Below, in pieces: positions 2,757 through 59,574 of a stretch of DNA of 64,000 nucleotides. Position 1 is the first letter of the stretch. Each line of letters starts with the position of its first letter. The position numbers and the translations under genes were made by a program. The notes beneath the pieces are model-generated. The model worked only from the letters and a program-made list of their open reading frames with translations. It had not been told where the DNA came from and did not search any database. The stretch spans positions 1-64,000 of the forward strand of contig NIVC01000619.1 of assembly GCA_002269645.1 (NCBI GenBank), given 5' to 3'. The stretch comes from Macrostomum lignano (taxonomy: Eukaryota).

Positions 2757-2951
2757 CTAACCAATCCTGACACGAAGACGGACGAACTTCTTCTTCAGCT
2801 TCGGAAACTGCTCCTCCGACACGCTGGACTCGTCCAGGTTGGACAGAGTCTCCTCCAGCACACGTTCGGCCATGGCCTTCTCCTCCTGGCTGGGCACGGC
2901 GACGGCCAGGGCTGCGCACAGCAAAAGTCCGAGAGCGAGTTGCCACTTCAT
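2757..2951 (-). CDS. Secreted prepropeptide copy 1 (64 aa; C-terminus KLKKK-FVRLRVRI-G)
   Basis: MKWQLALGLLLCAALAVA signal-like N-terminus, acidic spacer, KKK, terminal Gly-stop; family promoter at 3033-3065; nine further paralogs in the window. Confidence 0.9.
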   Translation of the reverse strand: MKWQLALGLLLCAALAVAVPSQEEKAMAERVLEETLSNLDESSVSEEQFPKLKKKFVRLRVRIG

Positions 2952-6141: not shown

Positions 6142-6360
6142 ATGAAGTGGCAGATCGCTCTCGGACTTCTGCTGTGCGCAGCCCTGGCCGTCGCCGAGCC
6201 CTCACGAGAGGAGAAGGCTGAGGCCATGGCCGTTCTGGAGGCTCTGTCCAACGTTGACGAGTCCAGCATGTCGGAGGAGGCCGTGGACACCGCTAAGAAG
6301 TGGCTCAGAGTTAGGGCCAGGGTTAGGGTCGGATCCAGGAGGAGGTCTAGGTCCGGTTAG
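6142..6360 (+). CDS. Secreted prepropeptide copy 2 (72 aa; AKK-WLRVRARVRVGSRRRSRS-G)
   Basis: Same architecture as copy 1; promoter module 6028-6060; divergent pro-piece and extended Arg/Ser tail. Confidence 0.9.
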   Translation: MKWQIALGLLLCAALAVAEPSREEKAEAMAVLEALSNVDESSMSEEAVDTAKKWLRVRARVRVGSRRRSRSG

Positions 6361-7909: not shown

Positions 7910-8332
7910 CATCCCAAGACAGCAAGCATCCCCCAGATAGCAAGCATCTTCCAGATTACAAGCAACCCCCAGATAGCAAGCATCCCCCAGATAGCAAGCA
8001 TCCCCCAGATAGCAAGCATCCCCCAGATAGCAAGCATCCGCCAGATAGCAAGCATCTTCCAGATAGCAAGCATCCGCCAGATAGCAAGCATCTTCCAGAT
8101 TACAAGCAACCCCCAGATAGCAAGCATCCCCCAGATAGCAAGCATCCCCCAGATAGCAAGCATCCCCCAGATAGCAAGCATCCGCCAGATAGCAAGCATC
8201 TTCCAGATTACAAGCAACCCCCAGATAGCAAGCATCCCCCAGATAGCAAGCATCCCCCAGATAGCAAGCATCCGCCAGATAGCAAGCATCCCCTACATAG
8301 ATAGCATCCCCAAATAGCAAGCATCCACCAGA
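7910..8332. repeat. 18-bp minisatellite (CCCCCAGATAGCAAGCAT), about 23 units
   Basis: Direct tandem repetition visible; explains the low-complexity ORFs in several frames. Confidence 0.95.
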
Positions 8333-13091: not shown

Positions 13092-13280
13092 CTAACCGAA
13101 ATGAATATGGATGAACTTCTTCTTCAGCTTCGGGCTCTGCTCCTGCGACAGGCTGGACTCGTCCAGGTTGGACAGAGTCTCCTCCAGCACACGTTCGGCC
13201 TGGGCCTTCTCTTCTTGGGTGGGCATGGCGACGGCCATGGCTGCGAACAGCAAAAGTCCGAGAGCGAGTTGCCACTTCAT
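13092..13280 (-). CDS. Secreted prepropeptide copy 3 (62 aa; KLKKK-FIHIHF-G)
   Basis: Family architecture; promoter module 13365-13397. Confidence 0.9.
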   Translation of the reverse strand: MKWQLALGLLLFAAMAVAMPTQEEKAQAERVLEETLSNLDESSLSQEQSPKLKKKFIHIHFG

Positions 13281-14475
13281 GATTGCTTGAGTCGAGTCGA
13301 GTCTTCGAGCTGTGTAGATTGAGTCGAATGTGAGATTGTTGTGTTAAGCAGTCGGGAGTTCCGAATTTATGCACATCAGATTGGCACGTGTTTCCGTTCC
13401 GAGGAGAAACGTTTGACTTGTCTGCATTCACGAGAGCAGAGTCTGAGTGACATCTCTTTATTTGATGACAGCTGTCAGTCAACTAGTTACATCAAAAGAG
13501 CATTTTCAGTGTAATTGCATTCAGCTCACTGCAGTGTATTTGACCTTAGTTATTTTCGAAGTTACATTTGATGAAGCCTCTATTGGTTGAAGTACGCTCG
13601 TGTCTGTTGACCTACGAGCTACCCTTGAATTACTGTCAAGGTCTTTCTAAATATTTTAAAAAGCACGTCAAATAAAAACAAATCGATTTAGACGTGATTT
13701 GCTCTACGTCTAATCACTAATTAACCAGTGGGGCTCCTGGATCATGAGACCGGTAGAGATGGAGAAAGTGAGAAAAGTAGGCTGAGGATGAAGAGAAATG
13801 ATTGAGATGAAGAGAGAGGCCTGTAGTGATAGAGGAAGACGGATTAATAGTTGATAGTAGAGGAAAGGAGACACTCGGGTGTATATCAAAAAACGTTAAA
13901 AGTATTTTAACAGCTGGTTACGATCCATGATGTACTATACGGAAGTTATTATACTGAGTCTCTTGATAAAAGTTTCTTAAATAAGTGTATATTGTTACAC
14001 TCCCTCTCATCGGATAAGTTCAAAACTCAATAGTTCAGTCGTCTGCTCGTAAACTGTCTGTAAAGTTTCAGCAACACCTAATACTGCTATGCCGTACTAG
14101 AAGGGCACGGCTTGAGAGTGCAATAATGTCTAGACTACGAGAGCGCGTTAGTGTATAGTTAATATTTAACAGCAGAAAAAAGTCGACCATATACATCCAG
14201 ACCGTCCGTTCCGTTCCGTTCCGTCGATAATGGCCACTTAATGGCCACTCAATCAAATACTTAAATTGTCTATGGCTAAATTTGATGCTCCTCCCCATAC
14301 CCAGTCTTTTCACGTCCAGTAAAATTAAGTTGAAATGAATTCCGGCAGTTATTAACTCCATAAAAGATAAAGTACGCTTTTCCAGACACTATTTTTAGTG
14401 CTCATATCGAGCGTGATCATATCTCATATCAGGACAGGGCCATAGACAAAAATAACAATAATTAAAGCCGCTACT

Positions 14476-14601
<126 letters not shown>

Positions 14602-16074: not shown

Positions 16075-16269
16075 CTAACCGATGTGGACCCTAACCCTGA
16101 AGATCTTCTTCTTCAGATCCATGGCCTTCTCCTCCGACACGTTGGGCTCGTCCAGGTTGGACAGAGTCTCCTCCAGCACACGTTCGGCCATGGCCTTCTC
16201 CTCCTGGCTGGGCACGGCGACGGCCAGGGCGGCGCACAGCAAAAGTCCGAGAGCGATCTGCCACTTCAT
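16075..16269 (-). CDS. Secreted prepropeptide copy 4 (64 aa; DLKKK-IFRVRVHI-G)
   Basis: Family architecture; promoter module 16351-16383. Confidence 0.9.
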   Translation of the reverse strand: MKWQIALGLLLCAALAVAVPSQEEKAMAERVLEETLSNLDEPNVSEEKAMDLKKKIFRVRVHIG

Positions 16270-19618: not shown

Positions 19619-19813
19619 ATGAAGTGGCAACTCGCTCTCGGACTTTTGCTGTGCGCAGCCCTGGCCGTCGCCGTGCCCAGCCAGGAGGAGAAGGCCATGG
19701 CCGAACGTGTGCTGGAGGAGACTCTGTCCAACCTGGACGAGTCCAGCGTGTCGGAGGAGCAGTTTCCGAAGCTGAAGAAGAAGTTCGTCCGTCTTCGTGT
19801 CAGGATTGGTTAG
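19619..19813 (+). CDS. Secreted prepropeptide copy 5 (64 aa; same protein as copy 1)
   Basis: Inverted-duplication partner of copy 1. Confidence 0.9.
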   Translation: MKWQLALGLLLCAALAVAVPSQEEKAMAERVLEETLSNLDESSVSEEQFPKLKKKFVRLRVRIG

Positions 19814-20830: not shown

Positions 20831-22040
20831 GGTGCTGAGGTCGCACTCGTGAGTGCTGAGTCGCTGAGCGCGAGCACTATTTGCATTGAGTCCATCTTGC
20901 CAGTAGTCTTTGTCTGTCGGCCGCCTAAAGGTCAGGGTTGACATACCCCGCACTCGGACTAATTGACTGTACCAGTGATGTTTTTAGTCAAATCGGCAGC
21001 TTCAAAACAGCCGACGGCCTTGTTGGCGAAGAGTAGCACCTCCTCGGAGTCCAAATTGCGCGCTTAGACTGGTAGCTTCAGGTCAAACAAAACGGTTAAA
21101 ACTCTCAAAGCAAGCAAGCCAGTTGCTTGGGTAAATCTTCCTCTGCACATCTACGCTTTTCTGATAAGCCCCAATGTAGTTTAAAGTAACCACATGCTAA
21201 ATTTTTTTTGTTTTCATGATAACGACTTATTTTCCCTGCATTGACTAGACATGATATATGTAACTATTGATAGTACCGAAGTAGATAGTCAATAATTAGC
21301 CATTACCCACCTTCCACTTCTTCCTGCCTATTACCGCTTAAGTAAAGGGCCCTTTACCTTGTTTTAGGTATATGAGTAGGAGCCTCATAAAGAGTTTTGA
21401 CTCATTTGGATTCAGAGTTTGTTATGTTTTCCTATTTCATCAGAAGAGCAGTCTTTTCATTTTCTGATTCACTGACTATTTACATGAACGCTAGAAGTCT
21501 AAGTCTAATTTAGCAGGCAAAAGATGTCAAAAGATGTCACAGATCCGTCTCTGCAAGTCGATTTCTCCCGCTTGCCTCAGTCGCTTAAATTTCACACAGC
21601 TCCCCTGCCTTTAATAAGATAATATGGTTAATTCGATAATTAAAATGTCTTCTATTTAGGGTATGTAGCCTTTAAAAAAATTAGGAAAAACCCTGAGAGA
21701 AATTTGAATGGGACGAATACGAACGAACCTTAACCATTATAGTCTGTCAATAAACTTAACTGATGAGCTTTAAACTAGGCGAATACACTTCTACTTGAAA
21801 TTCATTCTCGCGTTAATTGTTTAATTGCTCACTGTCATCAAAAGAGCAATTACTGCTCAGTCACCCAGACTCTGCTCCGTTAAAAGAAGACAGATCAAAC
21901 AGCGTCACTCCTCCGACCGGAAACACGTGCCAATCCGATGTGCATAAATTCGTAACTGCCAACTGCTCAAGAATTCAACTTCAAACTCGACTCAATCTAC
22001 ACACAGCTCGAAGACTCGACTCGACTCGACTCAAGCAATC

Positions 22041-22235
22041 ATGAAGTGGCAGATCGCTCTCGGACTTTTGCTGTGTGCCGCCCTGGCCGTCGCCGTGCCC
22101 AGCCAGGAGGAGAAGGCCATGGCCGAACGTGTGCTGGAGGAGACTCTGTCCAACCTGGACGAGCCCAACGTGTCGGAGGAGAAGGCCATGGACCTGAAGA
22201 AGAAGATCTTCAGGGTTAGGGTCCGCATCGGTTAG
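22041..22235 (+). CDS. Secreted prepropeptide copy 6 (64 aa; DLKKK-IFRVRVRI-G)
   Basis: Family architecture; promoter module 21917-21949. Confidence 0.9.
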   Translation: MKWQIALGLLLCAALAVAVPSQEEKAMAERVLEETLSNLDEPNVSEEKAMDLKKKIFRVRVRIG

Positions 22236-23186: not shown

Positions 23187-23359
23187 GAGATCACTACTGA
23201 TTCTCTCGGGCCATTTTTTTCTTTCTATGCTTACAGAAACTCATTACCAAACTCCCTATCACTGCCTCTACCTCTCTGCGTCGCATTTCTTCCTCTCCGT
23301 CCCTCATCATCGCACTGTCTTTCTCTGTGAGTCTACGCTTATTTGATGAGCCCCCAATG
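23187..23359 (+). repeat. 173-bp direct repeat, left copy (partner 27072-27244)
   Basis: GAGATCACTACTGA...GAGCCCCCAATG appears identical in both copies by eye. Confidence 0.9.
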
Positions 23360-26300
23360 GAGTTGCGTTCCAGCTTACGCCAAGTGCCTTCGCGGTTGGT
23401 GATTCACCCTGCAGTAGTAGCTCAGCGCGTTCTGCCCTGTCTTCAACTGGAATCGATTGCAGGACTTCCTCAGAGTTCGAAAGCCACTTCCGAGCTCGCA
23501 TACCGGCTCTCTTCCACAGCTCCATCAGCTGCTCATACAACTGCTTTGCTTTCTCAACTGTCTCCATGGAGTCGAGACTGTCGTCCATGTAGGTGGACCT
23601 CAAAACCGTCGTTGCCGCCAAAGGCAGTTGATCCTGATGTTGCCTTGCATTCTCTTGTGCCACTAGTTGAGCCAGGAACGGGGAGCAGTTGACGCCAAAG
23701 ACCACGCTGCAGAACTCGTATACTTTTGGCTCACATTCCTTTTGCATTCCGCGCCACAAGAACCGAAAGAAGCGGCGATCATCTGGAGCCAACCGAATTC
23801 GAAGATACATTTCCTCAATATCACAAACTAGCGCGACCGGATGCTTGCGAAATCTTAGCAGCACGCTGACGAGATTGTTTTGCAGCTTCGGTCCGGTGTG
23901 GATGGCATCGTTAAGGCTGAGACCGCCACAGCGAGCAGACGCGTCAAAGACTATGCGAGTCTTTGTTGTCTCCTTGTCCGCTCTCACTACTGCAAAATGT
24001 GGCAGGTACCAACTTCCCTGACCGGCGGCTCCGTCGACTTCTTGAATGTAGCCCTTCTCCAGCTGTCCATCAAACACTCGCTGATACGCCTGCGCCAGCT
24101 CCGGGTTCTTCTTAAGCCGTTGCTCCGTATTAACGAGCCGCTGCCGCGCCATATCCTTGTTGTCTGGCAACGTTGTCGGATCCATCTTCCATGGGATCGC
24201 CACCTGGTAACGACCGGCCTCCATCCTCATTGAACTCTTCGTCAATTGAACGGTCTCTTGCTCTCCCATCGACAACGTGGCCATCGCTCCACCGTCGGGG
24301 ACCTCATCCACCTCCCAGAAACGCTTTAAAACGCCATCCAAGTCTCCATCCGCAATCGATAGGAAAGTCCTCTGTCGTCCAGCTTCCGGTCCGTAGTCCC
24401 TTATCGGTCCCACACACGTCCAACCGATCGGCGTCAGTCGCGCTGTCGGCTCTCCAGGTTGACCCCCGACCTCACGGCAGGCGAAGTGTAGATCAACGTG
24501 ATCGATGCCGATGAGCATGTCAACCGTCTGATTGCCTTCAACTCTGCTGAACGGAATGCCACGCAAATGATGCCACTGCGACGCTAGCTGACTCCAATCC
24601 ACGGCCTTCATATCACCCGTCACTTTCTCCGTGGTGTACGCCAAAACCCTAGCTCGAAACGCTCCATCAAGACTCTTCAAGTCCACTTCAACCGGCGCTG
24701 TCTGGAAGGTATTTACCTGTCCGTTGAGTACTTTAACGTTCATCTGCTCAAACTTCTCTTCCAGCCCAAGTTCGGCCGCCACGTCCGAGTTCAAATATGT
24801 TCTTGTGCTCGCATCATCCAGAAGCGCGTTGACTTGCACCTGTCGGTCTCCATTGGACAAGATCACCGGAACAGTTCGCAGCGCAACCGCAGCGGTCTCC
24901 CTAACTAGCAAAGTACAGGCTTCTCGCTGCTTGTTCATCGTCTCCTTCGGCCTCTCGCCTGAACTTGGCGCCTTGAGGACCTTCTGCGTCCCCCCTTCGT
25001 GGCGTGCCATCGACTCACTCTTTTGCGCTTGGTGGAGCAGCCGGTGATGCCTGGCCTTGCACCCGTCGATGCCGCAGCTTCGCAATCGTCTGCACGACAA
25101 ACTCATGTGGTTGCTTCCCAAGCACCCAAAGCACAGCTTCCACTCGCGTACCGCTGCCCATCGAGCTTCAACATCCATACGCGCAAACCTAGGGCACGCC
25201 CACACTCCATGCTGCTCTCCACAGAGACGACATAACCTACGGTTGTCTGTTGGTTCGACACTGCGACTTTCAGCGGCGTCGTTGTGAGTGAACAGTGTTC
25301 GCTGTGGTTCACGAGACCCTGACCACTTCTTCCCAGCTTCCCGACCGCCATCGCTCACCGGTACCACTCCTCGCGTCGCCTCCCACGCAATCGTCCGATA
25401 TTCAGCCTCCTGTAACAACCACTGATGGAGCACACTCAGCGAATCTACTTTAGAGTTCTCGCCCACCCACCGGTGATAGCGCGCCAAGGTGTCTGCGGGC
25501 AGCTTCCGCTGAACGCGCAAATGTAACAGGCCATTGCTACTTAGCTCAACGTCACGCCCAGCCGCCTTCAAATTATTCACGGTCACATCCAACAGGTCTG
25601 CCAACTTTTTTAACTGCGCTGCACTCTCCGTCTGAATCGGCCGAAAATTGTCCAAGTCTTCCAGAGCTAACGTTAATCTGCGTCTCTCTCCACCGTACTC
25701 TCGCTCTAAACGCTCTAGTGCAGACCGGTAGGCGAAAGCCGAGAACCCTAAATTCACAATAAGCTTAAGTGCCTCCCCTTGCAGGGATTGACGCAGCTGC
25801 AACAACTTGTACGCGTCTGAAGCCGGCGACTCATCCACACATGCATAGAAGGCAGCCTTCCACCCCTCATACTGCCGCTTGTCTCCTGAGAACACAGGAA
25901 TAGACACACGCTGCAATTGTCGCCACATGTCCTGTCCAATCCTAGCTGACTGATCCTCTGCGTACATTGCCGCCGCCTGCCCTGCTCCGCCAAATGATAG
26001 GCCAGCCCGCCACTCTGACTCAAATTGCCTAGGCCTTTCGTTTGCGCTAACTCCAGCCGGGCCAGTACGCGCAGTGTACATTTCGCTAATTGGGGTTGGC
26101 CGCCAGCCTGGATTGTTGATTGGCCACTCTTTGGGTTGCCACCCCTCCCCGTAGTTTGCGACTCCTCACGCGCTTCGTGTACACTTCGCGACTGAACTTG
26201 CTGCCGCTGAACTCCAACCACTCTGTCTAGCCTCTCCATTTCATACTCCAACTCCTTTTGCTTAGCCTCAAATGTTTCTCTCAACCGCTGTTGACGCTCT

Positions 26301-26770
26301 TCCAGTTCAGCTTTCTGACACTTTGCGGCCTCTAGCTCTCTCTGATGACCATCTCTCTCAAGGCTCTCGATAGCGTTCTGGCGCTCCCTCTTTCGCAATT
26401 CACCAAGCAGTGCCACTGTCTCGTTGTACTCACATTCGAGTGCTTCTAGCTCCTTCACCGTTTGGGCCTGCACCAGAAAGTTGCCTTCAGCCGCTTGTAG
26501 TAGGTCCTGAAGCACCGCACTGACACGCTCAGCCTGCTCGTCCAGCGCTCCGGCAATCTTCTCCGCGCCCTCCAGTGTCACGCCGTCCGAGTCGAGGTAC
26601 TTGAGTAGCTTGTTTCGCTGCTTAGTGAAGGCACATTTTTCGACAGCCTTTTTGCCCTTCAGTTGCACCACTCGTTGCTCCGATTCCGATCTCTCTTGAT
26701 TTCGCTCAGATGCTGATGCTGTTGCTGCTGCCGCTGCTGCATCCGCAGCCTTTTCGTCTCCGAATGACAT
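23360..26770 (-). pseudogene. BEL/Pao gag-pol polyprotein split over two overlapping ORFs (25754-26770 and 23307-26081)
   Basis: Coiled-coil gag N-terminus in ORF1; DUF1759-like FSGDKRQYEGWKAAF onward in the -1 frame; overlap ~26090-26160. Confidence 0.8.
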
Positions 26771-29300: not shown

Positions 29301-29495
29301 CTAACCGAACCTAACATGAACACGGACGAACTTCTTCTTCAGCTTCGGAATCTGCTCCTCCGACACGCTGGACTCGTCCAGGTTGGACAGAGTCTCCTCC
29401 AGCACACGTTCGGCCATGGCCTTCTCCTCCTGGCTGGGCACGGCGACGGCCAGGGCTGCGCACAGCAGAAGTCCGAGAGCGAGTTGCCACTTCAT
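29301..29495 (-). CDS. Secreted prepropeptide copy 7 (64 aa; KLKKK-FVRVHVRF-G)
   Basis: Family architecture; promoter module 29587-29619. Confidence 0.9.
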   Translation of the reverse strand: MKWQLALGLLLCAALAVAVPSQEEKAMAERVLEETLSNLDESSVSEEQIPKLKKKFVRVHVRFG

Positions 29496-30263
29496 GATTG
29501 CTTGAGTCGAGTCGAGTCGAGTCGTCGAGCTGTGTGTAGATTGAGTCGAGTTTGAAGTTGAATTCTTGAGACGCTGGGAGTTACGAATTTATGCGCATTG
29601 GATTGGCACGTGTTTCCGTTCGGAGGAGCGACTCTACTTAACTTGTCTGCTTTCATGTAAAAAGAGTCAAGCAGTGACATGCTTGTTTTCCTACAAAAAT
29701 GATGCAGCTTTTGTTTGCTTGACGACAGCTGTCAGTCAAACAGATAACTTTTGAGAGTTCTCTCAGAGCAAGTGTATTCAATTCAACGCGGTCGATTTGA
29801 CTCTTAGCCGCTGGAGACTGTTTAAACTTTACTGTGTACTCGTAAGCGAAAATTCAACAATGCGGGAACAATTTCTCATAGTAGGGTAACTAAATAACTC
29901 TGTTTTATTCCTTTTTGACTGCAAGAAATATTGCACATAGGCATTACTCTATTATCCCACGCGTAGATATGAGTATAGGGCCAAACGTTGTGTCATCTTG
30001 AAGAGAGCAAAATTTCCAACAACGGAGCGAAAAAATATCTTTGCAAATGCAACAAATTCAGAGGTAGACTTCAGAGAGGCATTTAAAGTTTAGCTGCAAT
30101 GCAAACAAGCTGGCCTTCAAATAATTTTGAGATAATTACGAACATTAAGCCCTGATACAGTTCAACTTCTATTGGTCCTTGGGTAGATCTTCAATACGTA
30201 TAGTTAATAGTTTGTAGTGAAACTACAACATAACTTAGATTTGAATTGCAATGTAACGATATA

Positions 30264-31294: not shown

Positions 31295-34090
31295 CCCATA
31301 CGACTCCCCCCTCCAATTGCGGAGCACGGGGAAAAGAGACTGTAACTGAATTATAAAATGGTGGAATGGCTTAAATTATTGAAACGAAGCGGTTATACAG
31401 TTGAAATACGAGCTAAATTTATATGAGGGGTTGAACATTGAGAAATATTGAGAACAATGGAACAGCAGTCAGTAGACGTTATACATTACAAGGTTAATAA
31501 TAAATGTAATCATTATGGCGTCGGAATTGGACTCGGCGGCCGCTAGAGGTCGCTCTAGGAGTTGATGAGTCCATCGGTTCCTCTGGTTTGGCGGCTTCTT
31601 CCGGCAGCGAGTTCGCGGCCGGCTGAACAGCCGACTTCGGAAGCGAAAGTCGCGCCGGCTTGAGGCGATCGATAGAGACAGATTCGGTGTTGCCTGACGG
31701 TAGGAAAATAACGAAGAACTTGTCAGTTCGCTGTTTCACGCGATACGGCCCTGAGTACGGCGCCTCGAGCGGCGACCGCACGCGATCGACCCGAACCCAG
31801 ACGAATTCAGCCATTTCCAGGTCCTTGGGTACGTAGCTCCGTGGTTCGTGCGTCTTCGCGTGTGGACTCGGTAACTCTGTCAGCAGTTCCTGCAGCCGTG
31901 TCCGAATGTCCGTTGGGGCGAGTGGTTCAGAAGTTAGAATGCGCAGAACCATCGGAAGCTCGCCGGTAACCCTGGTGAACGGTGATATTCCTTGGTCGTC
32001 AGGTGCGACGTGCATCGCGAGGAGAGCCACAGGTAGGTCTGTCAGCCAGTCATTGCCTCGAGCACGTAGCATCGTCTTCAGGGTGCGATGGGCTCGCTCG
32101 ACCTTGCCATTGGTTTGAGGGTGGTAGGCCGTTGTGCGTAATCGATGAAAACCAATTGATGACGAGACCGAGTGAAAGAATTCTGATTCGAACTGGCGCC
32201 CCCGATCAGTGATTACATACAGTGGCACTCCGTAGCGCGAGACCCAAGACGAGACGAATGCATGGGCGACTACTTCCGCGGTTATTGATTCCAGTGGTGT
32301 AGCTTCTAGCCAGCCAGTCGAGCGGTCGACCATCGTGAGAAGGTAGCGGGCAGACTGGTGGCCAAAGGTGGTAGCATTAGCTGGTGGAAGTGGTCCCACA
32401 ATATCGATGTGTACCGCCTCAAAGCGATTTGATGGTAATGCGAAGGCCTGTTGCGGGGAGACAGTGTGGCGAGTGACTTTACTCCGTTGGCAGTCCTGGC
32501 AGTTCCAGCAGTAGGTCTTGATGGACTTGCGCATTCCGGGCCAAAAGTAACGTTCTGTGATGAGTTTTGCTGTTTTACGGTAGCCGAAATGACCAAGTCG
32601 ATGGAAGGAGGCAATTACGGCGTCGCGGAGAGACGGCGGAATGATCGGGCGAGGATACGGCGTTGACGTCTCACACCAAACGACGACGTCTTTGTCCAGA
32701 GAATACGATCGAATATTTGGTGCAGGTGAGAACGACTCCGGTCGTTGTGCTTCAGCGATACTGGGCAGATCAACAGGGAATTGGCTTGATGGGGCAGCGA
32801 CTACAGCGACTGTTGCGATGTTGGACACGCGATCATTCACTGGGAAGTCAGGCAGTCGAGAAAGGGCATCAGCTATTACGTTGTCTGCACCGCGAATGTA
32901 CTGGACATCTGCCACGTACTCGGACAAGATGGTCAAGTAGCGCTGATTGCGATCTGACGTAGTGGTGCGATTGGCGTGGAAGGCCTGAGCTAGTGGTTTA
33001 TGATCGGTGAACAAGGTCACGCTCAGTCCTTCAATGAGGTTGCGGAAGTGCAACACTGCCAGGTACGCCGCGAGTAGTTCTCGATCGAACGTGCTGTACA
33101 TCCTTTGAGATGATGACAACTTCTTGCTGAACATGCCAAGAGGTGACGTTCCGGTTGAAGAGGTTTGATGCAGAACGGCACCAACACAGTCGGCTGAGGC
33201 ATCAGTGTACAGGTGGTACGCAGTACAGTTGGGGTCCGGATGATGCAGCAGTAGTCTCTCTGAGAGAGCTTGTTTGATGTTTTCGAAAGATTTCTGATGC
33301 TGCTCTGCCCATTGGAAGTTTCCTGCTGACTGTAGTGATGCAGTGAGTAGGTCTTGCAGCGGACAGATGCGGTCGGCAAATTTGGGAACGAATCGACGGT
33401 AGAAACCGACGACACCGAGGAAGCGCCGAAGTGCGTTCGAATCCGTGGGTGTCGGCCAGTCAGTGATTATTTGGATCTTCTTCTGGAGAGGTTTTATTCC
33501 TTCAGGAGTCACGCGATGGCCAAGGAAATCTACCTCGGACTGAAAGAATTCGCACTTCTTCAAATGAACCTGTAGGCCGTGTGTTCTTAGGCGGTCCAAA
33601 ACTTGTTCCAAATGCGAGTAGTGGTCCTCACGAGTCTTTGAGAATATCAGGACATCATCGATGTAAGAGATGACGAATGACAGTCCGTGAAAAACAGAGT
33701 CGATGAAGCGTTGAAATGTTTGTGCTGCATTCCTCAGGCCGAAGGGCATGCGTGTGTACTCGAACAATCCAAACGGTGTGGTGATAGCGGTTTTGCAAAT
33801 ATCCTCTTCGGCGACTGGAATTTGATGAAAGGCGCGAACAAGGTCTAACTTTGAAAACACAGTGCTTCCGTGTAGGTACCGAGTGAAGGTTTGAATTTGT
33901 GGAACCGGATAGTTGTCCGGCTTTGTTTGTTTGTTCAATTCGCGATAGTCACCGCACGGACGCCAGCCAGCTCCCTTGGGTGCCATGTGGAGGGGTGACG
34001 CCCAAGGGCTTGAGGAAGGTCTGAGGTAGCCAGCATCGATTAGTTGCTGAAACTCCTGCTTTGCAGCCTGTAGTTTTGCAGGGTGCAGGA
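31295..34090 (-). mobile_element. 5'-truncated Ty3/Gypsy element (CsRN1-like) with uninterrupted RT-RNase H-integrase ORF (31494 to ~34090)
   Basis: [40 protein letters not shown] zinc finger (H..GH...C..C), HIDIVGP, ITDRG, NGKVER, C-terminal SSGRRVQF; polypurine tract GGAGGGGGGAG at 31304-31314. Confidence 0.92.
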
Positions 34091-35208: not shown

Positions 35209-35397
35209 ATGAAGTGGCAACTCGCTCTCGGACTTTTGCTGTTCGCAGCCATGGCCGTCGCCATGCCCACCCAGGAGGAGAAGGCCCAGGCCGAACGTGT
35301 GCTGGAGGAGACTCTGTCCAACCTGGATGAATCCAGCCTGTCGCAGGAGCAGAGCCCGAAGCTGAAGAAGAAGTTCATCCATATTCATTTCGGTTAG
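35209..35397 (+). CDS. Secreted prepropeptide copy 8 (62 aa; same protein as copy 3, FIHIHF-G)
   Basis: Family architecture; promoter module 35092-35124. Confidence 0.9.
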   Translation: MKWQLALGLLLFAAMAVAMPTQEEKAQAERVLEETLSNLDESSLSQEQSPKLKKKFIHIHFG

Positions 35398-36659: not shown

Positions 36660-36910
36660 GTCGCTAGTCGGACCGGGAACAGCGGAACCTTCCGACTGCT
36701 CAGAAACTTAACAATACAGCTACACACAGAAGGCCGTCGACAACGCTAAGAAGTGGCTAAGGGTTAGGGCTAGGGTTAGGATCGGTAAATCTGTCTGTCG
36801 CACAACATCTGTGATCAAACTCGCTTCATCGAAAGGCCAAGGCAAGGCTTGTGGGTACTAAGAGCTCACAGACAGCTGACACTACTCTGAACTCTGACCC
36901 GTGACCGCTT
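36660..36910 (+). pseudogene. Deleted pseudogene of the peptide family (copy-10 type)
   Basis: Promoter core lost; 5' UTR fused (ACACAG|AAGGCC) to KAVDNAKKWLRVRARVRIG; 1-nt deletion removes the stop; 3' flank matches copy 10. Confidence 0.85.
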
Positions 36911-37261
36911 TATTATTGACTGATCAGAATTAACAAAGCAAGGACAGTCTGTCCAAGCTATCAGCACCTTTAAACGGTTTTTTGAAGTTATTATTTACTC
37001 TGATTTACAAGTTATACGACATTGGATTGGTACTTGAGTTTATACAGTAGCAATGCACTTCGGCAACGGCTGGCGGTTCAATGCGTCAGCGGTCAGCAAG
37101 GAGGAACCCTTCTGGTAAACTACGAGTAGCTTGTAATGGTAGGCCAACGGGCGACAACAGGAACCCCAGCGTTCCACTCATCCCGACGCCAGGGCTGGAA
37201 TGCTTCATCGTCCAACGAGAACTGCAGAAACGCCTAGCTGAGATCAATATTCGAGAAATTC

Positions 37262-39054: not shown

Positions 39055-39243
39055 ATGAAGTGGCAACTCGCTCTCGGACTTTTGCTGTTCGCAGCCATGG
39101 CCGTCGCCATGCCCACCCAGGAGGAGAAGGCCCACGCCGAACGTGTGCTGGAGGAGACTCTGTCCAACCTGGACGAGTCCAGCCTGTCGCAGGAGCAGAG
39201 CCCGAAGCTGAAGAAGAAGTTCATCCATATTCATTTCGGTTAG
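39055..39243 (+). CDS. Secreted prepropeptide copy 9 (62 aa; FIHIHF-G; one pro-piece Q to H change versus copy 8)
   Basis: Family architecture; promoter module 38938-38970; flanks homologous to copy 8. Confidence 0.9.
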   Translation: MKWQLALGLLLFAAMAVAMPTQEEKAHAERVLEETLSNLDESSLSQEQSPKLKKKFIHIHFG

Positions 39244-41820: not shown

Positions 41821-42365
41821 CCATTGTGGGAACTATTTCTAGAAACAAAGACAGGGGTAAAGAGTAAAGGACTAAAGGCCAATCAACAACATTTTCAATC
41901 CATTTTGTTTTTCTCCGGCTTTGTAAGCTGGTGTGACTGGCAGCTACTGTTAACTTCCAATGCCAAGGTCCGTCGACGTGAATTCGACCAAAAAATCTCT
42001 AAAATTGATTCACTTTGCTAAAAATTAGTTGATTTTGGCATCTTACACAGCTAGGAGTCAAATTGCAGCGAGTTTGATAAACGAGTACATGTACTGTGAA
42101 ATATTTCTAGCGGTACTCGTTTGATTGGCAGCTGTCGTCAAACAAAGAAAGGCTGCATAGTACTCTCGCAGACAAGCAAACCGTGTAGCTATGCTCATGC
42201 TCACGTAAAAGCAAAAAAGTCAAACAACGATGCTCTTTGGACCGGAAACACGTGCCAATCCGTTGCGCATAAATTGGGAACTCCCAACTGCTCAAGAACT
42301 CAACTTTAAACTCGACTCAATCTACACACAGCTCGAAGACTCGACTCGACTCGACTCAAGCAATC

Positions 42366-42566
42366 ATGAAGTGGCAAATCGCTCTCGGACTTTTGCTGTG
42401 CGCAGCCCTGGCCGTCGCCGTGCCCAGCCAGGAGGAGAAGGCCATGGCCGAACGTGTGCTGGAGGAGACTCTGTCCAACCTGGACGAGTCCAGCGTGTCG
42501 GAGGAGAAGGCCGTCGACAACGCTAAGAAGTGGCTCAGGGTTAGGGCTAGGGTTAGGATCGGTTAA
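42366..42566 (+). CDS. Secreted prepropeptide copy 10 (66 aa; AKK-WLRVRARVRI-G)
   Basis: Family architecture; promoter module 42242-42274. Confidence 0.9.
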   Translation: MKWQIALGLLLCAALAVAVPSQEEKAMAERVLEETLSNLDESSVSEEKAVDNAKKWLRVRARVRIG

Positions 42567-48742: not shown

Positions 48743-50950
48743 ATCTCAGTGCCTGTCTCAGCTTGTCAGTCGAGTTGTATCCTGTGTGTGTCTCAGTGCC
48801 TGCAACAGCTTGTCAGTCGAGTTGTATCCTGTGTGTGTCTCAGTGCCTGCAACAGCTTGTCAGTCGAGTTGTATCCTGTGTGTGTGTCTCAGTGCCTGCA
48901 ACAGCTTGTCAGTCGAGTTGTATCCTGTGTGTGTGTCTCAGTGCCTGCAACAGCTTGTCAATCGAGTTGTATCCTGTGTGTGTGTCTCAGTGCCTGCAAC
49001 AGCTTGTCAGTCGAGTTGTATCCTGTGTGTGTCTCAGTGCCTGCAACAGCTTGTCAGTCGAGTTGTATCTTGTGTGTCTCAGTGCCTGCAACAGCTTGTC
49101 AGTCGAGTTGTATCCTGTGTGTGTCTCAGTGCCTGCAACAGCTTGTCAATCGAGTTGTATCCTGTGTGTGTCTCTGTGCCTGCAACAGCTTGTCAGTCGA
49201 GTTGTATCCTGTGTGTGTCTCAGTGCCTGCAACAGCTTGTCAGTCGAGTTGTATCCTGTGTGTGTCTCAGTGCCTGCAACAGCTTGTCAGTCGAGTTGTA
49301 TCCTGTGTGTGTGTCTCAGTGCCTGCAACAGCTTGTCAGTCGAGTTGTATCCTGTGTGTGTGTCTCAGTGCCTGCAACAGCTTGTCAGTCGACTTGTATC
49401 CTGTGTGTGTCTCAGTGCCTGCAACAGCTTGTCAGTCGAGTTGCATCTTGTGTGTGTCTCAGTGCCTGCAACAGCTTGTCAGCCGAGTTGTATCCTGTGT
49501 GTGTCTCAGTGCCTGCAACAGCTTGTCAGTCGAGTTGTATCCTGTGTGTGTGTCTCAGTGCCTGCAACAGCTTGTCAGTCGAGTTGTATCTTTTGTGTCT
49601 CAGTGCCTGCAACAGCTTGTCAGTCGAGTTGTATCCTGTGTGTGTCTCAGTGCCTGCAACAGCTTGTCAGTCGAGTTGTATCCTGTGTGTGTGTCTCAGT
49701 GCCTGCAACAGCTTGTCAGTCGAGTTGTATCCTGTGTGTGTCTCAGTGCCTGCAACAGCTTGTCAGTCGAGTTGTATCTTGTGTGTCTCAGTGCCTGCAA
49801 CAGCTTGTCAGTCGAGTTGTATCCTGTGTGTGTCTCAGTGCCTGCAACAGCTTGTCAATCGAGTTGTATCCTGTGTGTGTCTCTGTGTCTGCAACAGCTT
49901 GTCAATCGAGTTGTATCCTGTGTGTGTCTCAGTGCCTGCAACAGCTTGTCAGTCGAGTTGTATCCTGTGTGTGTCTCAGTGCCTGCAACAGCTTGTCAGT
50001 CGAGTTGTATCCTGTGTGTGTGTCTCAGTGCCTGCAACAGCTTGTCAGTCGAGTTGTATCCTGTGTGTGTGTCTCAGTGCCTGCAACAGCTTGTCAGTCG
50101 ACTTGTATCCTGTGTGTGTCTCAGTGCCTGCAACAGCTTGTCAGTCGAGTTGCATCTTGTGTGTGTCTCAGTGCCTGCAACAGCTTGTCAGCCGAGTTGT
50201 ATCCTGTGTGTGTCTCAGTGCCTGCAACAGCTTGTCAGTCGAGTTGTATCCTGTGTGTGTCTCAGTGCCTGCAACAGCTTGTCAGTCGAGTTGTATCTTT
50301 TGTGTCTCAGTGGCTGCAACAGCTTGTCAGTCGAGTTGTATCCTGTGTGTGTCTCAGTGCCTGCAACAGCTTGTCAGTCGAGTTGTATCCTGTGTGTGTG
50401 TCTCAGTGCCTGCAACAGCTTGTCAGTCGAGTTGTATCCTGTGTGTGTCTCAGTGCCTGCAACAGCTTGTCAGTCGAGTTGTATCCTGTGTGTGTCTCAG
50501 TGCCTGCAACAGCTTGTCAGTCGAGTTGTATCTTGTGTGTCTCAGTGCCTGCAACAGCTTGTCAGTCGAGTTGTATCCTGTGTGTGTCTCAGTGCCTGCA
50601 ACAGCTTGTCAGTCGAGTTGTATCCTGTGTGTGTCTCAGTGCCTGCAACAGCTTGTCAGTCGAGTTGTATCCTGTGTGTGTCTCAGTGCCTGCAACAGCT
50701 TGTCAGTCGAGTTGTGTGTGTCTCAGTGCCTGCAACAGCTTGTCAGTCGAGTTGTATCTTGTGTGTGTCTCAATGCCTGCAACAGCTTGTCAGTCGAGTT
50801 GTATCCTGTGTGTGTCTCAGTGCCTGCAACAGCTTGTCAGTCGAGTTGTATCCTGTGTGTGTCTCAGTGCCTGCAACAGCTTGTCAGTCGAGTTGCATCC
50901 TGTGTGTGTCTCAGTGCCTGCAACAGCTTGTCAGTTGAGTTGTATCCTGT
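48743..50950. repeat. 45-49-bp satellite (GTCTCAGTGCCTGCAACAGCTTGTCAGTCGAGTTGTATCC + (TG)n), about 47 units
   Basis: Directly visible; the three 700+ aa ORFs are by-products. Confidence 0.97.
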
Positions 50951-51356: not shown

Positions 51357-51874
<518 letters not shown>

Positions 51875-58262: not shown

Positions 58263-58816
58263 GATGCAATACTAGTTCATCAAGGACCTTGGGAGCTGGA
58301 TTAGAAAGCTTTAAAGGCTGGATCTGGCCTTGGGACTAGAGGTTGCTGATGCCTGACTTAAAGCAATATAAAACACTTGATGATTTACTAAAGCCTATTT
58401 AAAAGACTGTTATAAATAAATTCACTATCTTCATAGATTACATCAAATATCTTTTTCTTTTTGAATTTTCCTATTAATTTATTTGAATATTTTTAGTTTT
58501 GTCATAATTAACTATCTTAACCTCCCAATGTATATATTAAAAACTAAAACTCTGTCTTTTTTTATAAGCATTACTACAATAAAATGAATGTCCCTACTAT
58601 TTATAACTCCAAGAAATGTCCCAGTTTGTACTGAATGGTCCCAAATGGTAATATTTGAAGGTTATTTATCTTAATTAAAATAACGACTAAAACATTATTG
58701 CTGGGGCATGGGTCAGGTATAACAATGATTGAGTATTGCAGACAATAACCTAGGCATAATCTGTCCCTTCAGCCAATCGCTGCATTCCAATTGCATTGGC
58801 CAGCGCACCAGAGACA

Positions 58817-59191
58817 ATGGACTCAGACTGCACCAGCAACAATCTGGACAAACAGATTGAAAAGCTTCGCCGATGCGAGCTGATTACGGAGGCCGAGGTC
58901 AAGGCTCTGTGCGGCAAAGCTAGAGAAATCCTCATTGAAGAGTCCAATGTGCAGTGCGTTGACGCCCCAGTCACAGTCTGCGGCGACATCCACGGCCAGT
59001 ACTACGACCTCAAGGAGCTCTTCAGCCACGGCGGGGATGTGCCCGACACGAACTACCTGTTCCTTGGCGACTTTGTCGATCGCGGCTTCTACTCGGTTGA
59101 GACGTTCCTGCTGCTGCTGGCGCTGAAGGTGCGGTATCCCGACCGCATCACCCTGATCCGGGGCAACCACGAGAGTCGCCAGATAACTCAG
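58817..59191 (+). CDS. PPP4C: Serine/threonine-protein phosphatase 4 catalytic subunit, coding exon 1
   Basis: GDIHGQ, GDFVDRG, RGNHE PPP motifs; CAG|GT donor, phase 0. Confidence 0.93.
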
Positions 59192-59574
59192 GTTTGAAGG
59201 GCAATAATTTCAACTCGAAATTGATTTTCTCCGGTCAGAAAAGTTTCTAGGTATTCTCGAAAAGCTAGAAAATTAAATCTGAACCAATTTTCATCTTTTA
59301 ATATATCTTGCCTGTCTTTTAGCTCCATTGATATTTATAGAGCATTTTTAGAATAAAAGGCTTAAATTATATTAGGCTAATACAGGCCATATTAATGAGA
59401 AAAGTGGAGCCTAGTCAATATTGTCTCATTTTTCTGATTGCTTGTACTCGTATTATTCTAGTTAAAATTCAAATTTTTTTACACATTCAATAAGCTGAGC
59501 ATTACGAAATAGATTCATAAATCAAGCTGTCATTTTTTATTTTAGACACAGGGCATGTACGTAGGATATAAAAT

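What the first reader, a model, noticed from the sequence alone, without database searches (positions are those of the whole stretch)
42535..42566. Arg-Val repeat and Gly-stop are written in telomere-like TTAGGG hexamers
Seen: copy 10 has TCAGGG TTAGGG CTAGGG TTAGGA (42535-42558); copy 2 has TTAGGG CCAGGG TTAGGG (6311-6328); copies 4 and 6 have TCAGGG TTAGGG; the pseudogene has TAAGGG TTAGGG CTAGGG TTAGGA. Nine of ten genes end GGT TAG. By the genetic code, (TTAGGG)n reads AGG-GTT (Arg-Val) in one frame and GGT-TAG (Gly-stop) in another, so one telomeric tract could supply both the peptide and its amidation signal. Established: telomeric RNA can be translated to Val-Arg dipeptide proteins. Inference: the mature exon part may derive from, or expand like, an interstitial telomeric repeat. 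Caveat: copies 1, 5 and 7 use other codons.
Basis: partly seen in the sequence, partly recalled or inferred. Interest (0 to 1): 0.75.

Follow-up and report, generated by a model that had tools for sequence, protein, structure and literature searches.

The report
Flatworm cationic peptide genes, telomere look-alike codons
The telomere-like TTAGGG hexamers are really there, but they are best read as an Arg-hydrophobic two-codon unit (AGG-GTY) that expanded inside a rapidly diversifying family of small secreted, amidated cationic peptides of the flatworm Macrostomum lignano, not as captured telomere DNA.

Summary
The window is Macrostomum lignano DNA with ten intact single-ORF paralogs and one truncated pseudogene. 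Each paralog encodes a signal peptide, an acidic propiece, a KK or KKK site, a 6-18 residue peptide that alternates cationic and hydrophobic residues, and Gly-stop. Copies 2, 4, 6, 10 and the pseudogene carry TTAGGG-like hexamers. The host telomere is TTAGGG.

The telomere-origin reading is poorly supported:
- The whole signal reduces to one fact. In one 3' module lineage, 32 of 34 Arg codons are AGG. With Arg fixed as AGG, copy 10's 21/24 telomere match has P=0.13. Val there is GTT 10, GTC 11.
- The longest exact telomeric run is 11 nt.
- AGG-GTT and GGT-TAG lie in different frames of (TTAGGG)n.
- GGT-TAG also ends His-only paralogs with no AGG (FIHIHF, GFHVHFH), so it is older and independent.
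- Relatives write the same alternating pattern with CGC/CGT/CAT/AGA codons, and all four outgroup loci start with CGY.
- No G-quadruplex is predicted.

Paralogs differ by exact 6-nt (AGG-NYY) indels. This supports "expands like a hexamer repeat" but not "derives from a telomere". The family is undescribed and has the precursor layout of frog-skin antimicrobial peptides. That is the more useful result.

The parts
42366..42566 (+). Copy 10: prepropeptide gene, mature WLRVRARVRI + Gly-stop (GGT TAA). It is a chimera, with a clade-B 5' half and a clade-A-like 3' module.
   Evidence: ORF and codons. 100% match to M. lignano BOX15_Mlig004045g1/g2. 5' and 3' trees disagree.
42535..42558 (+). The flagged tract TCAGGG TTAGGG CTAGGG TTAGGA, read as (L)-R-V-R-A-R-V-R. 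It matches (TTAGGG)n at 21 of 24 positions; the longest exact run is 10 nt.
   Evidence: TRF sees a weak 12-nt x2.1 repeat at 42532-42557.
6142..6360 (+). Copy 2: mature WLRVRARVRVGSRRRSRS + Gly-stop (GGT TAG). Hexamer tract at 6305-6328. Carries a 24-nt extension relative to copy 10.
16075..16269 (-). Copy 4: mature IFRVRVHI + Gly-stop. TCAGGGTTAGGG at 16089-16100.
22041..22235 (+). Copy 6: mature IFRVRVRI + Gly-stop. TCAGGGTTAGGG at 22210-22221; exact telomeric run of 11 nt.
36728..36914 (+). 5'-truncated pseudogene: a copy of copy 10's 3' module (hexamers at 36758-36781) with a 1-nt deletion in GGTTAA. It starts at the same junction where copy 10 switches clade.
2757..2951 (-). Copy 1: mature FVRLRVRI, codons CGT CTT CGT GTC AGG ATT GGT TAG (mixed CGT/AGG type).
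19619..19813 (+). Copy 5: same mature peptide and codons as copy 1.
29301..29495 (-). Copy 7: mature FVRVHVRF, codons CGT GTT CAT GTT AGG TTC GGT TAG.
13092..13280 (-). Copy 3: mature FIHIHF (CAT ATT CAT TTC GGT TAG). No Arg and no AGG, yet it ends GGT TAG.
35209..35397 (+). Copy 8: mature FIHIHF, ends GGT TAG.
39055..39243 (+). Copy 9: mature FIHIHF, ends GGT TAG.

Best explanation
**What the genes are.** The flagged tract is the mature-peptide coding end of one member of a tandemly arrayed, lineage-specific gene family of Macrostomum lignano. Each gene is a single ORF with its own conserved promoter-like upstream block. Each encodes:
- a signal peptide (MKWQ[IL]ALGLLLCAALAVA);
- an acidic propiece;
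- a KK/KKK processing site;
- a short peptide in which cationic (Arg/His) and hydrophobic residues strictly alternate;
- a C-terminal Gly followed by stop, the usual amide donor.

**Likely products (inferred).** The products are probably 6-10 residue (18 in copy 2), C-terminally amidated, amphipathic beta-strand cationic peptides. They are most probably host-defence or otherwise membrane-active secreted peptides. The precursor layout (conserved signal and propiece, hypervariable cationic tail) is that of frog-skin antimicrobial peptide precursors.

**Why it looks telomeric.**
1. The alternation is selected at the peptide level. Relatives encode it with many different codons.
2. In one lineage of 3' modules (copies 2, 4, 6, 10, the pseudogene, and paralogs on other contigs), a single two-codon unit, AGG-GTY, multiplied by hexamer slippage or tandem duplication.
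3. That unit spread by recombination between paralogs.
4. The hydrophobic codon then drifted by single steps: GTT/GTC to GCT, GCC, ATT, ATC, CTT, CTC, TTC.

AGG-GTT happens to be a circular permutation of TTAGGG, so arrays of the unit look telomeric.

**Gly-stop.** The GGT-TAG ending is an older, independent, shared ancestral feature.

**Shown versus inferred.** Shown here: gene structures, codons, 6-nt indels, codon statistics, family membership, mosaic trees. Inferred: proteolytic processing, amidation, peptide function, and slippage as the mechanism of unit gain and loss.
For: **Organism and family.**
- 100% hits to M. lignano proteins.
- A profile search of 1.84 billion representatives and an alignment search find only M. 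lignano paralogs plus one Logan contig.
- All share the signal and acidic propiece but carry very different cationic tails: GFHVHFHG, FHLHLPGK, FRIRIRWGRVARNVLRLLGK, WLLRRIRIRWRRV...GK, WRIKSACKIFRRLLHLARKCYAKKG, FLRVRLPRVRMPRVRL....

**Conserved 5' half, variable mature part.** Mean pairwise identity among window copies is 0.92 for signal+propiece and 0.85 for the 5' flank. It is 0.59 for the mature part and 0.63-0.67 for the 3'UTR.

**Peptide-level periodicity with other codons.** Examples are CGC ATC AGA ATC AGG TGG (L010), CGC ATC CGC ATC AGG TGG (L011), CAC GTT CAT TTT CAT (L013), CAT ATT CAT TTC (copies 3, 8, 9) and CGT CTT CGT GTC AGG (copies 1, 5).

**Hexamer-unit turnover.**
- Paralogs with near-identical flanks differ by exactly one AGG-NYY unit. 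L004/L006 FVRVRVRL compares with L001 FVRARVRVRL and FVRVRARIRL; copy 6 compares with L002. Copy 2 carries a 24-nt insert.
- Mature lengths are 6, 8 or 10 residues.

**Codon statistics.**
- In this module lineage Arg is AGG 32/34, and Val is GTT 10, GTC 11, GTG 0.
- In relatives' mature regions AGG is 12/32 and 3/7, and GTT is 5/10 and 6/9.
- GC3 drops from 0.81-0.84 in the signal+propiece region to 0.39-0.78 in the mature region in every group, including groups without telomere-like hexamers.

**Simulation.** Copy 10's telomere match is P=0.13 once Arg is fixed as AGG.

**Other points.**
- A GTY-AGG unit already sits at the C-terminal end of the CGT-type paralogs (GTC AGG ATT; GTT AGG TTC). 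ATC AGG is present in outgroups. Both give a coding source for the expanding unit.
- Recombination: 5' and 3' trees disagree, and copy 10 is chimeric.
- GGT TAG occurs in His-only paralogs. Clade A and copy 10 use GGT TAA. Distant members use GGC AAG TAA/TAG or GGC TAA.
Against: - AGG is only about 10% of Arg codons in conserved M. lignano genes. An all-AGG array therefore needs a special cause. Slippage explains it, but it is inferred from indel patterns, not observed.
- The host telomere really is TTAGGG. Degenerate telomere-like satellites do exist near paralogs on other contigs (L004 18931-19189). A telomeric seed is therefore not impossible.
- Deep ancestral codons cannot be reconstructed rigorously. 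The mature part is short and hypervariable, and paralogs recombine. The crown-group node has only 58.5% bootstrap support.
- No outgroup species of known identity was available.
- Processing, amidation and antimicrobial function are untested. No expression site is known.
- The mature region is about as divergent as the 3'UTR, so positive selection is not demonstrated.
Confidence: 0.7

Rival explanations
1. Telomeric origin. A short interstitial (TTAGGG)n tract was captured in frame after the KK site, for example by telomerase-mediated break repair or by an ITS-like satellite. It created the (Arg-Val)n peptide, and later point changes blurred it.
For: - The host telomere is TTAGGG.
- AGG is a rare Arg codon in conserved genes, yet it makes up 32/34 Arg codons here.
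- Copy 10 matches the repeat at 21 of 24 positions.
- All hydrophobic codons in the arrays are within one step of GTT or GTC.
- A degenerate telomere-like satellite lies about 9 kb from clade-A paralogs.
Against: - No paralog has two perfect consecutive units; the longest exact run is 11 nt.
- GTT is not favoured over GTC (10 vs 11).
- The flanks of the array (TTC GTC ... NTT GGT TAR) are codon-for-codon homologous to CGT-type paralogs of the same length (FVRLRVRI vs FVRVRVRL). This looks like unit replacement within an existing coding frame rather than an insertion.
- Outgroups and early-branching paralogs have CGY/CAY at the first cationic position.
- The 3'UTRs carry no telomeric remnants.
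- FISH shows no interstitial telomeric sites, although short ones would be missed.
- Gly-stop cannot come from the same tract without a 2-nt deletion, and it predates the arrays.
Confidence: 0.1
2. Pure coincidence of codon usage, with no repeat dynamics. Each Arg and Val codon was chosen independently under the family's own AT3-shifted usage in the mature region.
For: - Mature regions across the whole superfamily use AGG (about 38%) and GTT (about 50%) far more than conserved genes do.
- An exact telomeric run of 10 nt or more has P=0.09 under that usage.
Against: - 21/24 matches still has P=2.6e-3 under family usage.
- 32/34 AGG is far above 38%.
- Exact 6-nt indels between otherwise near-identical paralogs show unit gain and loss.
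Confidence: 0.12
3. Selection at the nucleic-acid level. The telomere-like RNA or DNA is kept for a function of its own, such as a G-quadruplex, binding of telomere-repeat proteins, or YAG|G acceptor-like motifs.
For: - Hydrophobic codons before AGG always end in a pyrimidine (0 GTG among 21 Val codons), giving YAGG at every unit.
- GC3 is lower in the mature part than in the signal+propiece region.
Against: - There are only three GGG runs. ViennaRNA with G4 allowed predicts none in copy 10 or copy 2, in short or full mRNA context, whereas the (UUAGGG)4 control folds at -12.64.
- The low GC3 is shared by paralogs with no telomere-like sequence.
- The pyrimidine-ending pattern is what descent from a GTY founder predicts.
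Confidence: 0.03

Closest known systems
Frog-skin antimicrobial peptide precursors (preprodermaseptin/temporin-type); from my own knowledge, not tested here
   Same: - Highly conserved signal peptide and acidic propiece, a dibasic cleavage site, and a hypervariable short cationic C-terminal peptide.
- Gly or Gly-Lys as amide donor. GK endings occur in the paralogs of L010, L011 and L014.
- A multigene family diversified by duplication.
   Different: - No sequence homology, and a flatworm rather than a vertebrate.
- Mature peptides here are shorter (6-10 aa) and strictly alternating (beta-strand type) rather than helical.
- Activity is untested.
Designed beta-sheet-forming cationic peptides such as (IRIK)2-NH2 / (VRVK)n; from my own knowledge
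   Same: Eight-residue amidated peptides with alternating hydrophobic and cationic residues. IFRVRVRI-NH2 and FVRVRVRL-NH2 have the same design.
   Different: Those are synthetic peptides. Nothing here shows that the natural peptides assemble or kill microbes.
Interstitial telomeric sequences (ITS)
   Same: The hexamer period and a TTAGGG-like consensus. The host telomere is TTAGGG.
   Different: - Only one or two perfect units per gene.
- The tract lies in a conventional reading frame whose flanks are homologous to non-telomeric paralogs.
- A real degenerate telomere-like array in this genome looks quite different: about 260 bp, non-coding, period 6/18 (L004).
Val-Arg dipeptide-repeat proteins translated from telomeric RNA (TERRA), PMC9992779
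   Same: The same codon arithmetic: (UUAGGG)n read as AGG-GUU gives Arg-Val.
   Different: Those are long repeats made by non-ATG translation of telomere transcripts. Here there is an ATG-initiated secretory precursor with 2-4 Arg-X units at an internal gene cluster.
Flatworm FMRFamide-like neuropeptides (e.g. YIRFamide, GYIRFamide); from my own knowledge
   Same: A short amidated peptide at the C-terminal end of a small precursor. Two paralog types end in -VRF-NH2.
   Different: The C-terminus is not conserved (RI, RL, HI, HF, RF, RS amides). There are tens of fast-diverging tandem paralogs and an acidic neutralising propiece. These traits fit effector peptides better than a receptor ligand.

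Membership tests
Interstitial telomeric sequence | Tandem array of several perfect or near-perfect TTAGGG units | tested here: not met
   The longest exact telomeric run is 10-11 nt. Copy 10 has one perfect unit of four.
Interstitial telomeric sequence | Sequence is an insertion relative to homologous loci | tested here: not met
   The arrays occupy the same codon positions, and the same total length, as CGT/CAT-type mature peptides in paralogs. Differences are 6-nt unit indels.
Interstitial telomeric sequence | Repeat matches the host telomere motif | tested here: met
   A (TTAGGG)n probe labels M. lignano chromosome ends (PMC5068713).
Amidated secretory peptide precursor | N-terminal signal peptide | tested here: inconclusive
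   The sequence shows a short N-terminal stretch (MKW), a hydrophobic core and an A-V-A cleavage motif, invariant in all paralogs. No signal-peptide predictor was available.
Amidated secretory peptide precursor | Basic cleavage site before the peptide and C-terminal Gly (or Gly-Lys) before stop | tested here: met
   KK/KKK and a terminal Gly are invariant in the 12-sequence alignment of the close (MKWQ-type) paralogs. Distant members end GK or G, except L008.
Amidated secretory peptide precursor | Mature amidated peptide detected | not testable with these tools
   Needs peptidomics.
Host-defence (antimicrobial) peptide gene family with conserved signal/propiece and hypervariable mature peptide | Conserved signal and acidic propiece with a hypervariable cationic tail across many paralogs | tested here: met
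   Identity is 0.92 for signal+propiece against 0.59 for the mature part. Tails are diverse.
Host-defence (antimicrobial) peptide gene family with conserved signal/propiece and hypervariable mature peptide | Antimicrobial activity, or immune or epithelial expression | not testable with these tools
   No paper in the library describes these genes.
RNA G-quadruplex | Four G-runs able to form stacked tetrads; G4 in the predicted fold | tested here: not met
   There are three GGG runs plus GG. No G4 appears in the minimum-free-energy fold with G4 allowed. The control folds.
FMRFamide-like neuropeptides | Conserved C-terminal RF-amide | tested here: not met
   Of the ten window genes, only copy 7 (and L005 elsewhere) ends RF-Gly. 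The others end RI, RL, HI, HF or RS.

The most novel reading that the evidence does not exclude
The AGG-type mature module was seeded by a short telomere-like (TTAGGG)n tract captured in frame behind the KK processing site of an existing secretory precursor. A cationic Arg-Val effector peptide would then have been born from telomeric repeat DNA and diversified by unit slippage.
Probability: 0.08. Interest if true: 0.75.

Novelty: new member of a known kind. Interest (0 to 1): 0.3.

Why it matters
**As posed (peptide and amidation signal written by telomere DNA).** This would be a striking route for making new coding sequence. The evidence points instead to a look-alike produced by expansion of an AGG-GTY two-codon unit.

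**What remains useful.**
- A large, unannotated ("hypothetical protein") family of tandemly arrayed genes in a genetically tractable model flatworm.
- The genes predict very short amidated Arg/His-hydrophobic alternating peptides.
- Their precursor architecture converges on that of amphibian antimicrobial peptides.
- The family gives a clean example of peptide length evolving in dipeptide (6-nt) steps with module shuffling between paralogs.
- The peptides can be synthesised and tested cheaply. To my knowledge few flatworm effector peptides of this kind have been characterised.

Tried and rejected
- **Rfam scan of the window:** no hits.
- **Pfam on the precursors:** only a marginal Lock_Gag1-like match on the acidic propiece. 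It just reaches its cut-off in the fused P0008 model (27.1 vs 27 bits) and is below cut-off in the window proteins. I treat it as spurious.
- **Literature searches** for the locus tags, for Macrostomum antimicrobial peptides and for Macrostomum neuropeptides: nothing on this family.
- **3'UTR-based tree** to follow the mature module's own history: distant paralogs do not align well and outgroups fall inside the tree, so I did not use it for rooting.
- **Search for further family members in the window** with distant paralogs as queries: only the ten genes were found.
- **Finding an identified outgroup species:** only one Logan contig of unknown species turned up (L008, SRR31628392).
- **Intron in the genes ("mature exon"):** rejected. 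All ten ORFs are contiguous. The break in BLAST matches at about position 250 of the query is where 3' modules differ, not an intron.
- **Palindromic segmental duplication as an explanation of copy pairs 1/5, 4/6 and 3/8/9:** from the gene coordinates, the pairs have no common centre. Not pursued.

Full report
**1. What is at the coordinates**

Positions 42535-42558 are part of a 66-codon ORF (42366-42566, +). It encodes MKWQIALGLLLCAALAVAVPSQEEKAMAERVLEETLSNLDESSVSEEKAVDNAKKWLRVRARVRIG, and its last codons are TGG CTC AGG GTT AGG GCT AGG GTT AGG ATC GGT TAA.

BLASTN of this gene against the window, followed by ORF extraction, finds ten intact paralogs and a 5'-truncated pseudogene at 36728-36914.

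| Copy | Coordinates | Strand |
|---|---|---|
| 1 | 2757-2951 | - |
| 2 | 6142-6360 | + |
| 3 | 13092-13280 | - |
| 4 | 16075-16269 | - |
| 5 | 19619-19813 | + |
| 6 | 22041-22235 | + |
| 7 | 29301-29495 | - |
| 8 | 35209-35397 | + |
| 9 | 39055-39243 | + |
| 10 | 42366-42566 | + |

Nine of ten genes end GGT TAG, and copy 10 ends GGT TAA. There is no intron; every ORF is contiguous.

**2. Organism and family**

The proteins are 100% identical to "hypothetical proteins" of the flatworm Macrostomum lignano.

Three searches recover only M. lignano paralogs plus one short contig from an unidentified sequencing run (P0015/L008). They were two word-index searches and one exhaustive profile search of 1.84 billion representatives.

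All members share the signal peptide and an acidic propiece ending in KK/KKK. After that they carry very different cationic tails:
- FVRLRVRI, IFRVRVRI, FVRVHVRF, FIHIHF, WLRVRARVRI, FVRVRVRL;
- GFHVHFH, FHLHLP(GK);
- FRIRIRWGRVARNVLRLL(GK), WLLRRIRIRWRRV...(GK);
- a two-Cys peptide, WRIKSACKIFRRLLHLARKCYAKK(G);
- a PRVRL-repeat peptide.

Among the window copies, mean pairwise identity is 0.92 for signal+propiece and 0.85 for the 5' flank. It is only 0.59 for the mature part and 0.63-0.67 for the 3'UTR.

Every copy has a conserved upstream CACGTG-CCAAT-...-GCATAAAT block and a (GACTC)2-4 microsatellite in the 5'UTR.

The NCBI models include in-frame 5'UTR as "partial" proteins. The published M. 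lignano annotation is transcriptome-guided (PMC5730564). If these models come from that annotation, the genes are transcribed.

No paper in the searchable library describes the family. Pfam and Rfam add nothing.

**3. Is the telomere likeness more than chance?**

Against random sequence, yes. There are 13 near-matches to TTAGGGTTAGGG, against 3.2 expected. But 11 of them sit in five paralogous loci carrying one 3' module. They count as about one event.

The right null conditions on the peptide. I recoded the peptide with independent synonymous codons.

| Codon usage used for recoding | P for copy 10's 21/24 match |
|---|---|
| Conserved-gene usage | <5e-6 |
| Usage in mature regions of relatives lacking such arrays | 2.6e-3 |
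| Same, with Arg fixed as AGG | 0.13 |

So the whole signal is the AGG monopoly: 32 of 34 Arg codons in this module lineage are AGG.

- **AGG.** It is a minor codon in conserved M. lignano genes (310/2993 = 10.4%; PMC6739440 Table S3). In the mature regions of this superfamily it is common: 12/32 in outgroups and 3/7 in the QFPKL-tail group.
- **GTT.** It is not enriched by the telomere-like context. Val is GTT 10, GTC 11 in the arrays, against GTT 5/10 and 6/9 in the other groups. In conserved genes GTT is 20% of Val.
- **GC3.** It falls from 0.81-0.84 in the signal+propiece region to 0.39-0.78 in the mature part in all groups. The T-ending codons are therefore a general property of these fast-changing tails.
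- **Exact runs.** The longest exact telomeric run anywhere is 11 nt, less than two units.

**4. Evidence on mechanism**

- **Unit indels.** Paralogs with near-identical flanks differ by exactly one AGG-NYY unit. For example, TTC GTC AGG GTC AGG GTT AGG CTT compares with TTT GTC AGG GCT AGG GTC AGG GTT AGG CTT. Likewise copy 6's AGG GTT AGG GTC CGC ATC compares with L002's AGG GTT AGG GCC AGG ATC CAT ATT.
- **Copy 2.** It carries a 24-nt insert.
- **Lengths.** Mature peptides are 6, 8 or 10 residues long.
- **Weak internal repeat.** TRF reports a weak 12-nt repeat inside copy 10.
- **Single-step drift.** All hydrophobic codons in the arrays are one step from GTT or GTC.
- **A coding source for the unit.** A GTY-AGG unit is already present at the C-terminal end of CGT-type paralogs (GTC AGG ATT; GTT AGG TTC). 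ATC AGG occurs in outgroups. Expansion of a pre-existing coding unit is therefore enough.
- **Mosaicism.** Trees of the 5' half and the 3'UTR disagree. Copy 10 joins a clade-B 5' half to a clade-A-like 3' module. The pseudogene begins at that same junction.

**5. Ancestral state**

The tree uses the 5' flank, signal and propiece. Bootstrap support:
- the MRWQ/MKYQ outgroups separate from the rest at 96.5%;
- the FHLHLP genes branch before the remaining close (MKWQ-type) paralogs at 95.5%;
- the crown group is weakly supported at 58.5%;
- a basal position for clade A has 0% support.

The first cationic codon is CGY in all four outgroup loci with DNA in hand, and CAY in the FHLHLP and GFHVHFH genes. 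It is AGG/AGA only in the modules whose propiece tail reads A-x-D. Parsimony therefore makes CGY/CAY ancestral and the AGG arrays derived.

Caveat: recombination and the short, hypervariable target make this moderate evidence only.

**6. Gly-stop**

AGG-GTT and GGT-TAG are different frames of (TTAGGG)n. A single tract would need a 2-nt deletion (AGG GTT [AG]G GTT AG) to give Arg-Val-Gly-stop. No gene has GTT before GGT; they have ATC, ATT, TTC, CTT or TCC.

| Genes | Ending |
|---|---|
| FIHIHF and GFHVHFH (no AGG) | GGT TAG |
| FHLHLP | GGT AAA TAA |
| Clade A and copy 10 | GGT TAA |
| Distant members | GGC AAG TAA/TAG or GGC TAA |

Gly-stop is therefore an old family trait, independent of the hexamers.

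**7.

- **Host telomere.** A (TTAGGG)n FISH probe labels all M. lignano chromosome ends and no interstitial sites (PMC5068713).
- **G-quadruplex.** The copy-10 segment has three GGG runs. ViennaRNA with G4 allowed places no G4 in the 37-nt, 101-nt or 471-nt contexts, nor in copy 2. The (UUAGGG)4 control gives -12.64 kcal/mol.
- **Telomeric Val-Arg translation.** This is indeed published (PMC9992779). It concerns non-ATG translation of telomere transcripts, not a secretory ORF.

**8. Interpretation**

The most likely account has three parts:
- peptide-level selection for alternating cationic and hydrophobic residues;
- slippage-type gain and loss of a two-codon unit;
- recombination among tandem paralogs.

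The telomere resemblance is incidental, and Gly-stop is independent (confidence about 0.7). A telomeric seed cannot be excluded (about 0.1). The motif matches the host telomere, AGG is otherwise rare, and a degenerate telomere-like satellite exists about 9 kb from paralogs on other contigs.

The peptides' function is inferred from architecture only. A conserved signal and acidic propiece with a hypervariable amidated cationic tail is the layout of frog-skin antimicrobial peptide precursors. Eight-residue alternating Arg-hydrophobic amides resemble designed beta-sheet antimicrobial peptides (my own knowledge). A neuropeptide role is less likely because the C-terminus is not conserved.

**9. Verdict**

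The telomere-origin and one-tract-supplies-both claims are not supported. The hexamer-step expansion is supported. The gene family itself is an undescribed member of a known kind of system. Interest 0.3.

Noticed in passing
L004 18931-19189 (- strand) and L006 about 22004-22133: A degenerate telomere-like satellite of about 260 bp (TRF period 6/18, unit GTTAGGGTTATGGTTTAG). It lies inside the range of the neighbouring EF-hand gene, about 9 kb from clade-A peptide genes on two other M. lignano contigs. The window has nothing comparable.
   Followed up: partly
window 42338-42357, 22013-22032, 29504-29524, and the 5'UTR of every copy: A (GACTC)n pentamer microsatellite immediately upstream of each ATG, with 2-4 units depending on the paralog. 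This is a second slippage-prone repeat in the same genes.
   Followed up: partly
about 75-105 nt upstream of each ATG, e.g. window 42250-42285: A conserved CACGTG (E-box-like), CCAAT and GCATAAAT (TATA-like) block in all paralogs, suggesting each copy has its own promoter.
   Followed up: no
window 42366-42566 and 36728-36914: Copy 10 is a chimera: its 5' half groups with clade B and its 3' module with clade A. The truncated pseudogene starts at exactly that junction, which hints at a recombination hotspot or a mobile 3' module.
   Followed up: partly
window 6329-6357: Copy 2 carries a 24-nt extension encoding GSRRRSRS before the final Gly (AGG AGG AGG TCT AGG). This gives an 18-residue, Arg/Ser-rich tail that is unique in the family.
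   Followed up: no
L008 706-813 (Logan contig SRR31628392_42504, species unknown): A distant relative whose mature part is a 15-nt (Pro-Arg-Val-Arg-Leu) repeat written CCG AGG GTY CGY CTG. It ends SKK-TGA with no Gly. This is another, different repeat expansion in the same superfamily.
   Followed up: partly
L006 10001-12935; protein P0012: The public gene model P0008 fuses two tandem copies into one protein with a duplicated propiece. The UniRef name 'SERPIN domain-containing protein' for P0012 looks like a mis-annotation.
   Followed up: no
window 23307-26770 (-), 31494-33986 (-), 286-870 (-): Retrotransposon ORFs interspersed with the peptide genes. The first has a DUF1759 gag-like domain plus reverse transcriptase. 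The second has reverse transcriptase, RNase H and integrase. The third is a reverse-transcriptase fragment.
   Followed up: partly
window 8418-11162, 7913-8332, 48744-50950, 51357-51874, 14471-14600: Large satellite arrays: 23 bp x119, 18 bp x23, 47 bp x47, TCTA x129 and CTA x44.
   Followed up: no
window 58796-59197 (+): An exon of a PP2A-family Ser/Thr phosphatase (Pfam Metallophos hit). By eye it resembles the PP4 catalytic subunit. It is the only conserved housekeeping gene seen in the window.
   Followed up: partly
all AGG-type arrays: Every codon preceding AGG ends in T or C. There are 0 GTG among 21 Val codons, although GTG is 48% of Val in conserved genes and 22/45 in the signal+propiece region of the same genes. 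Descent from a GTY founder explains this, but a YAG|G constraint was not excluded.
   Followed up: partly
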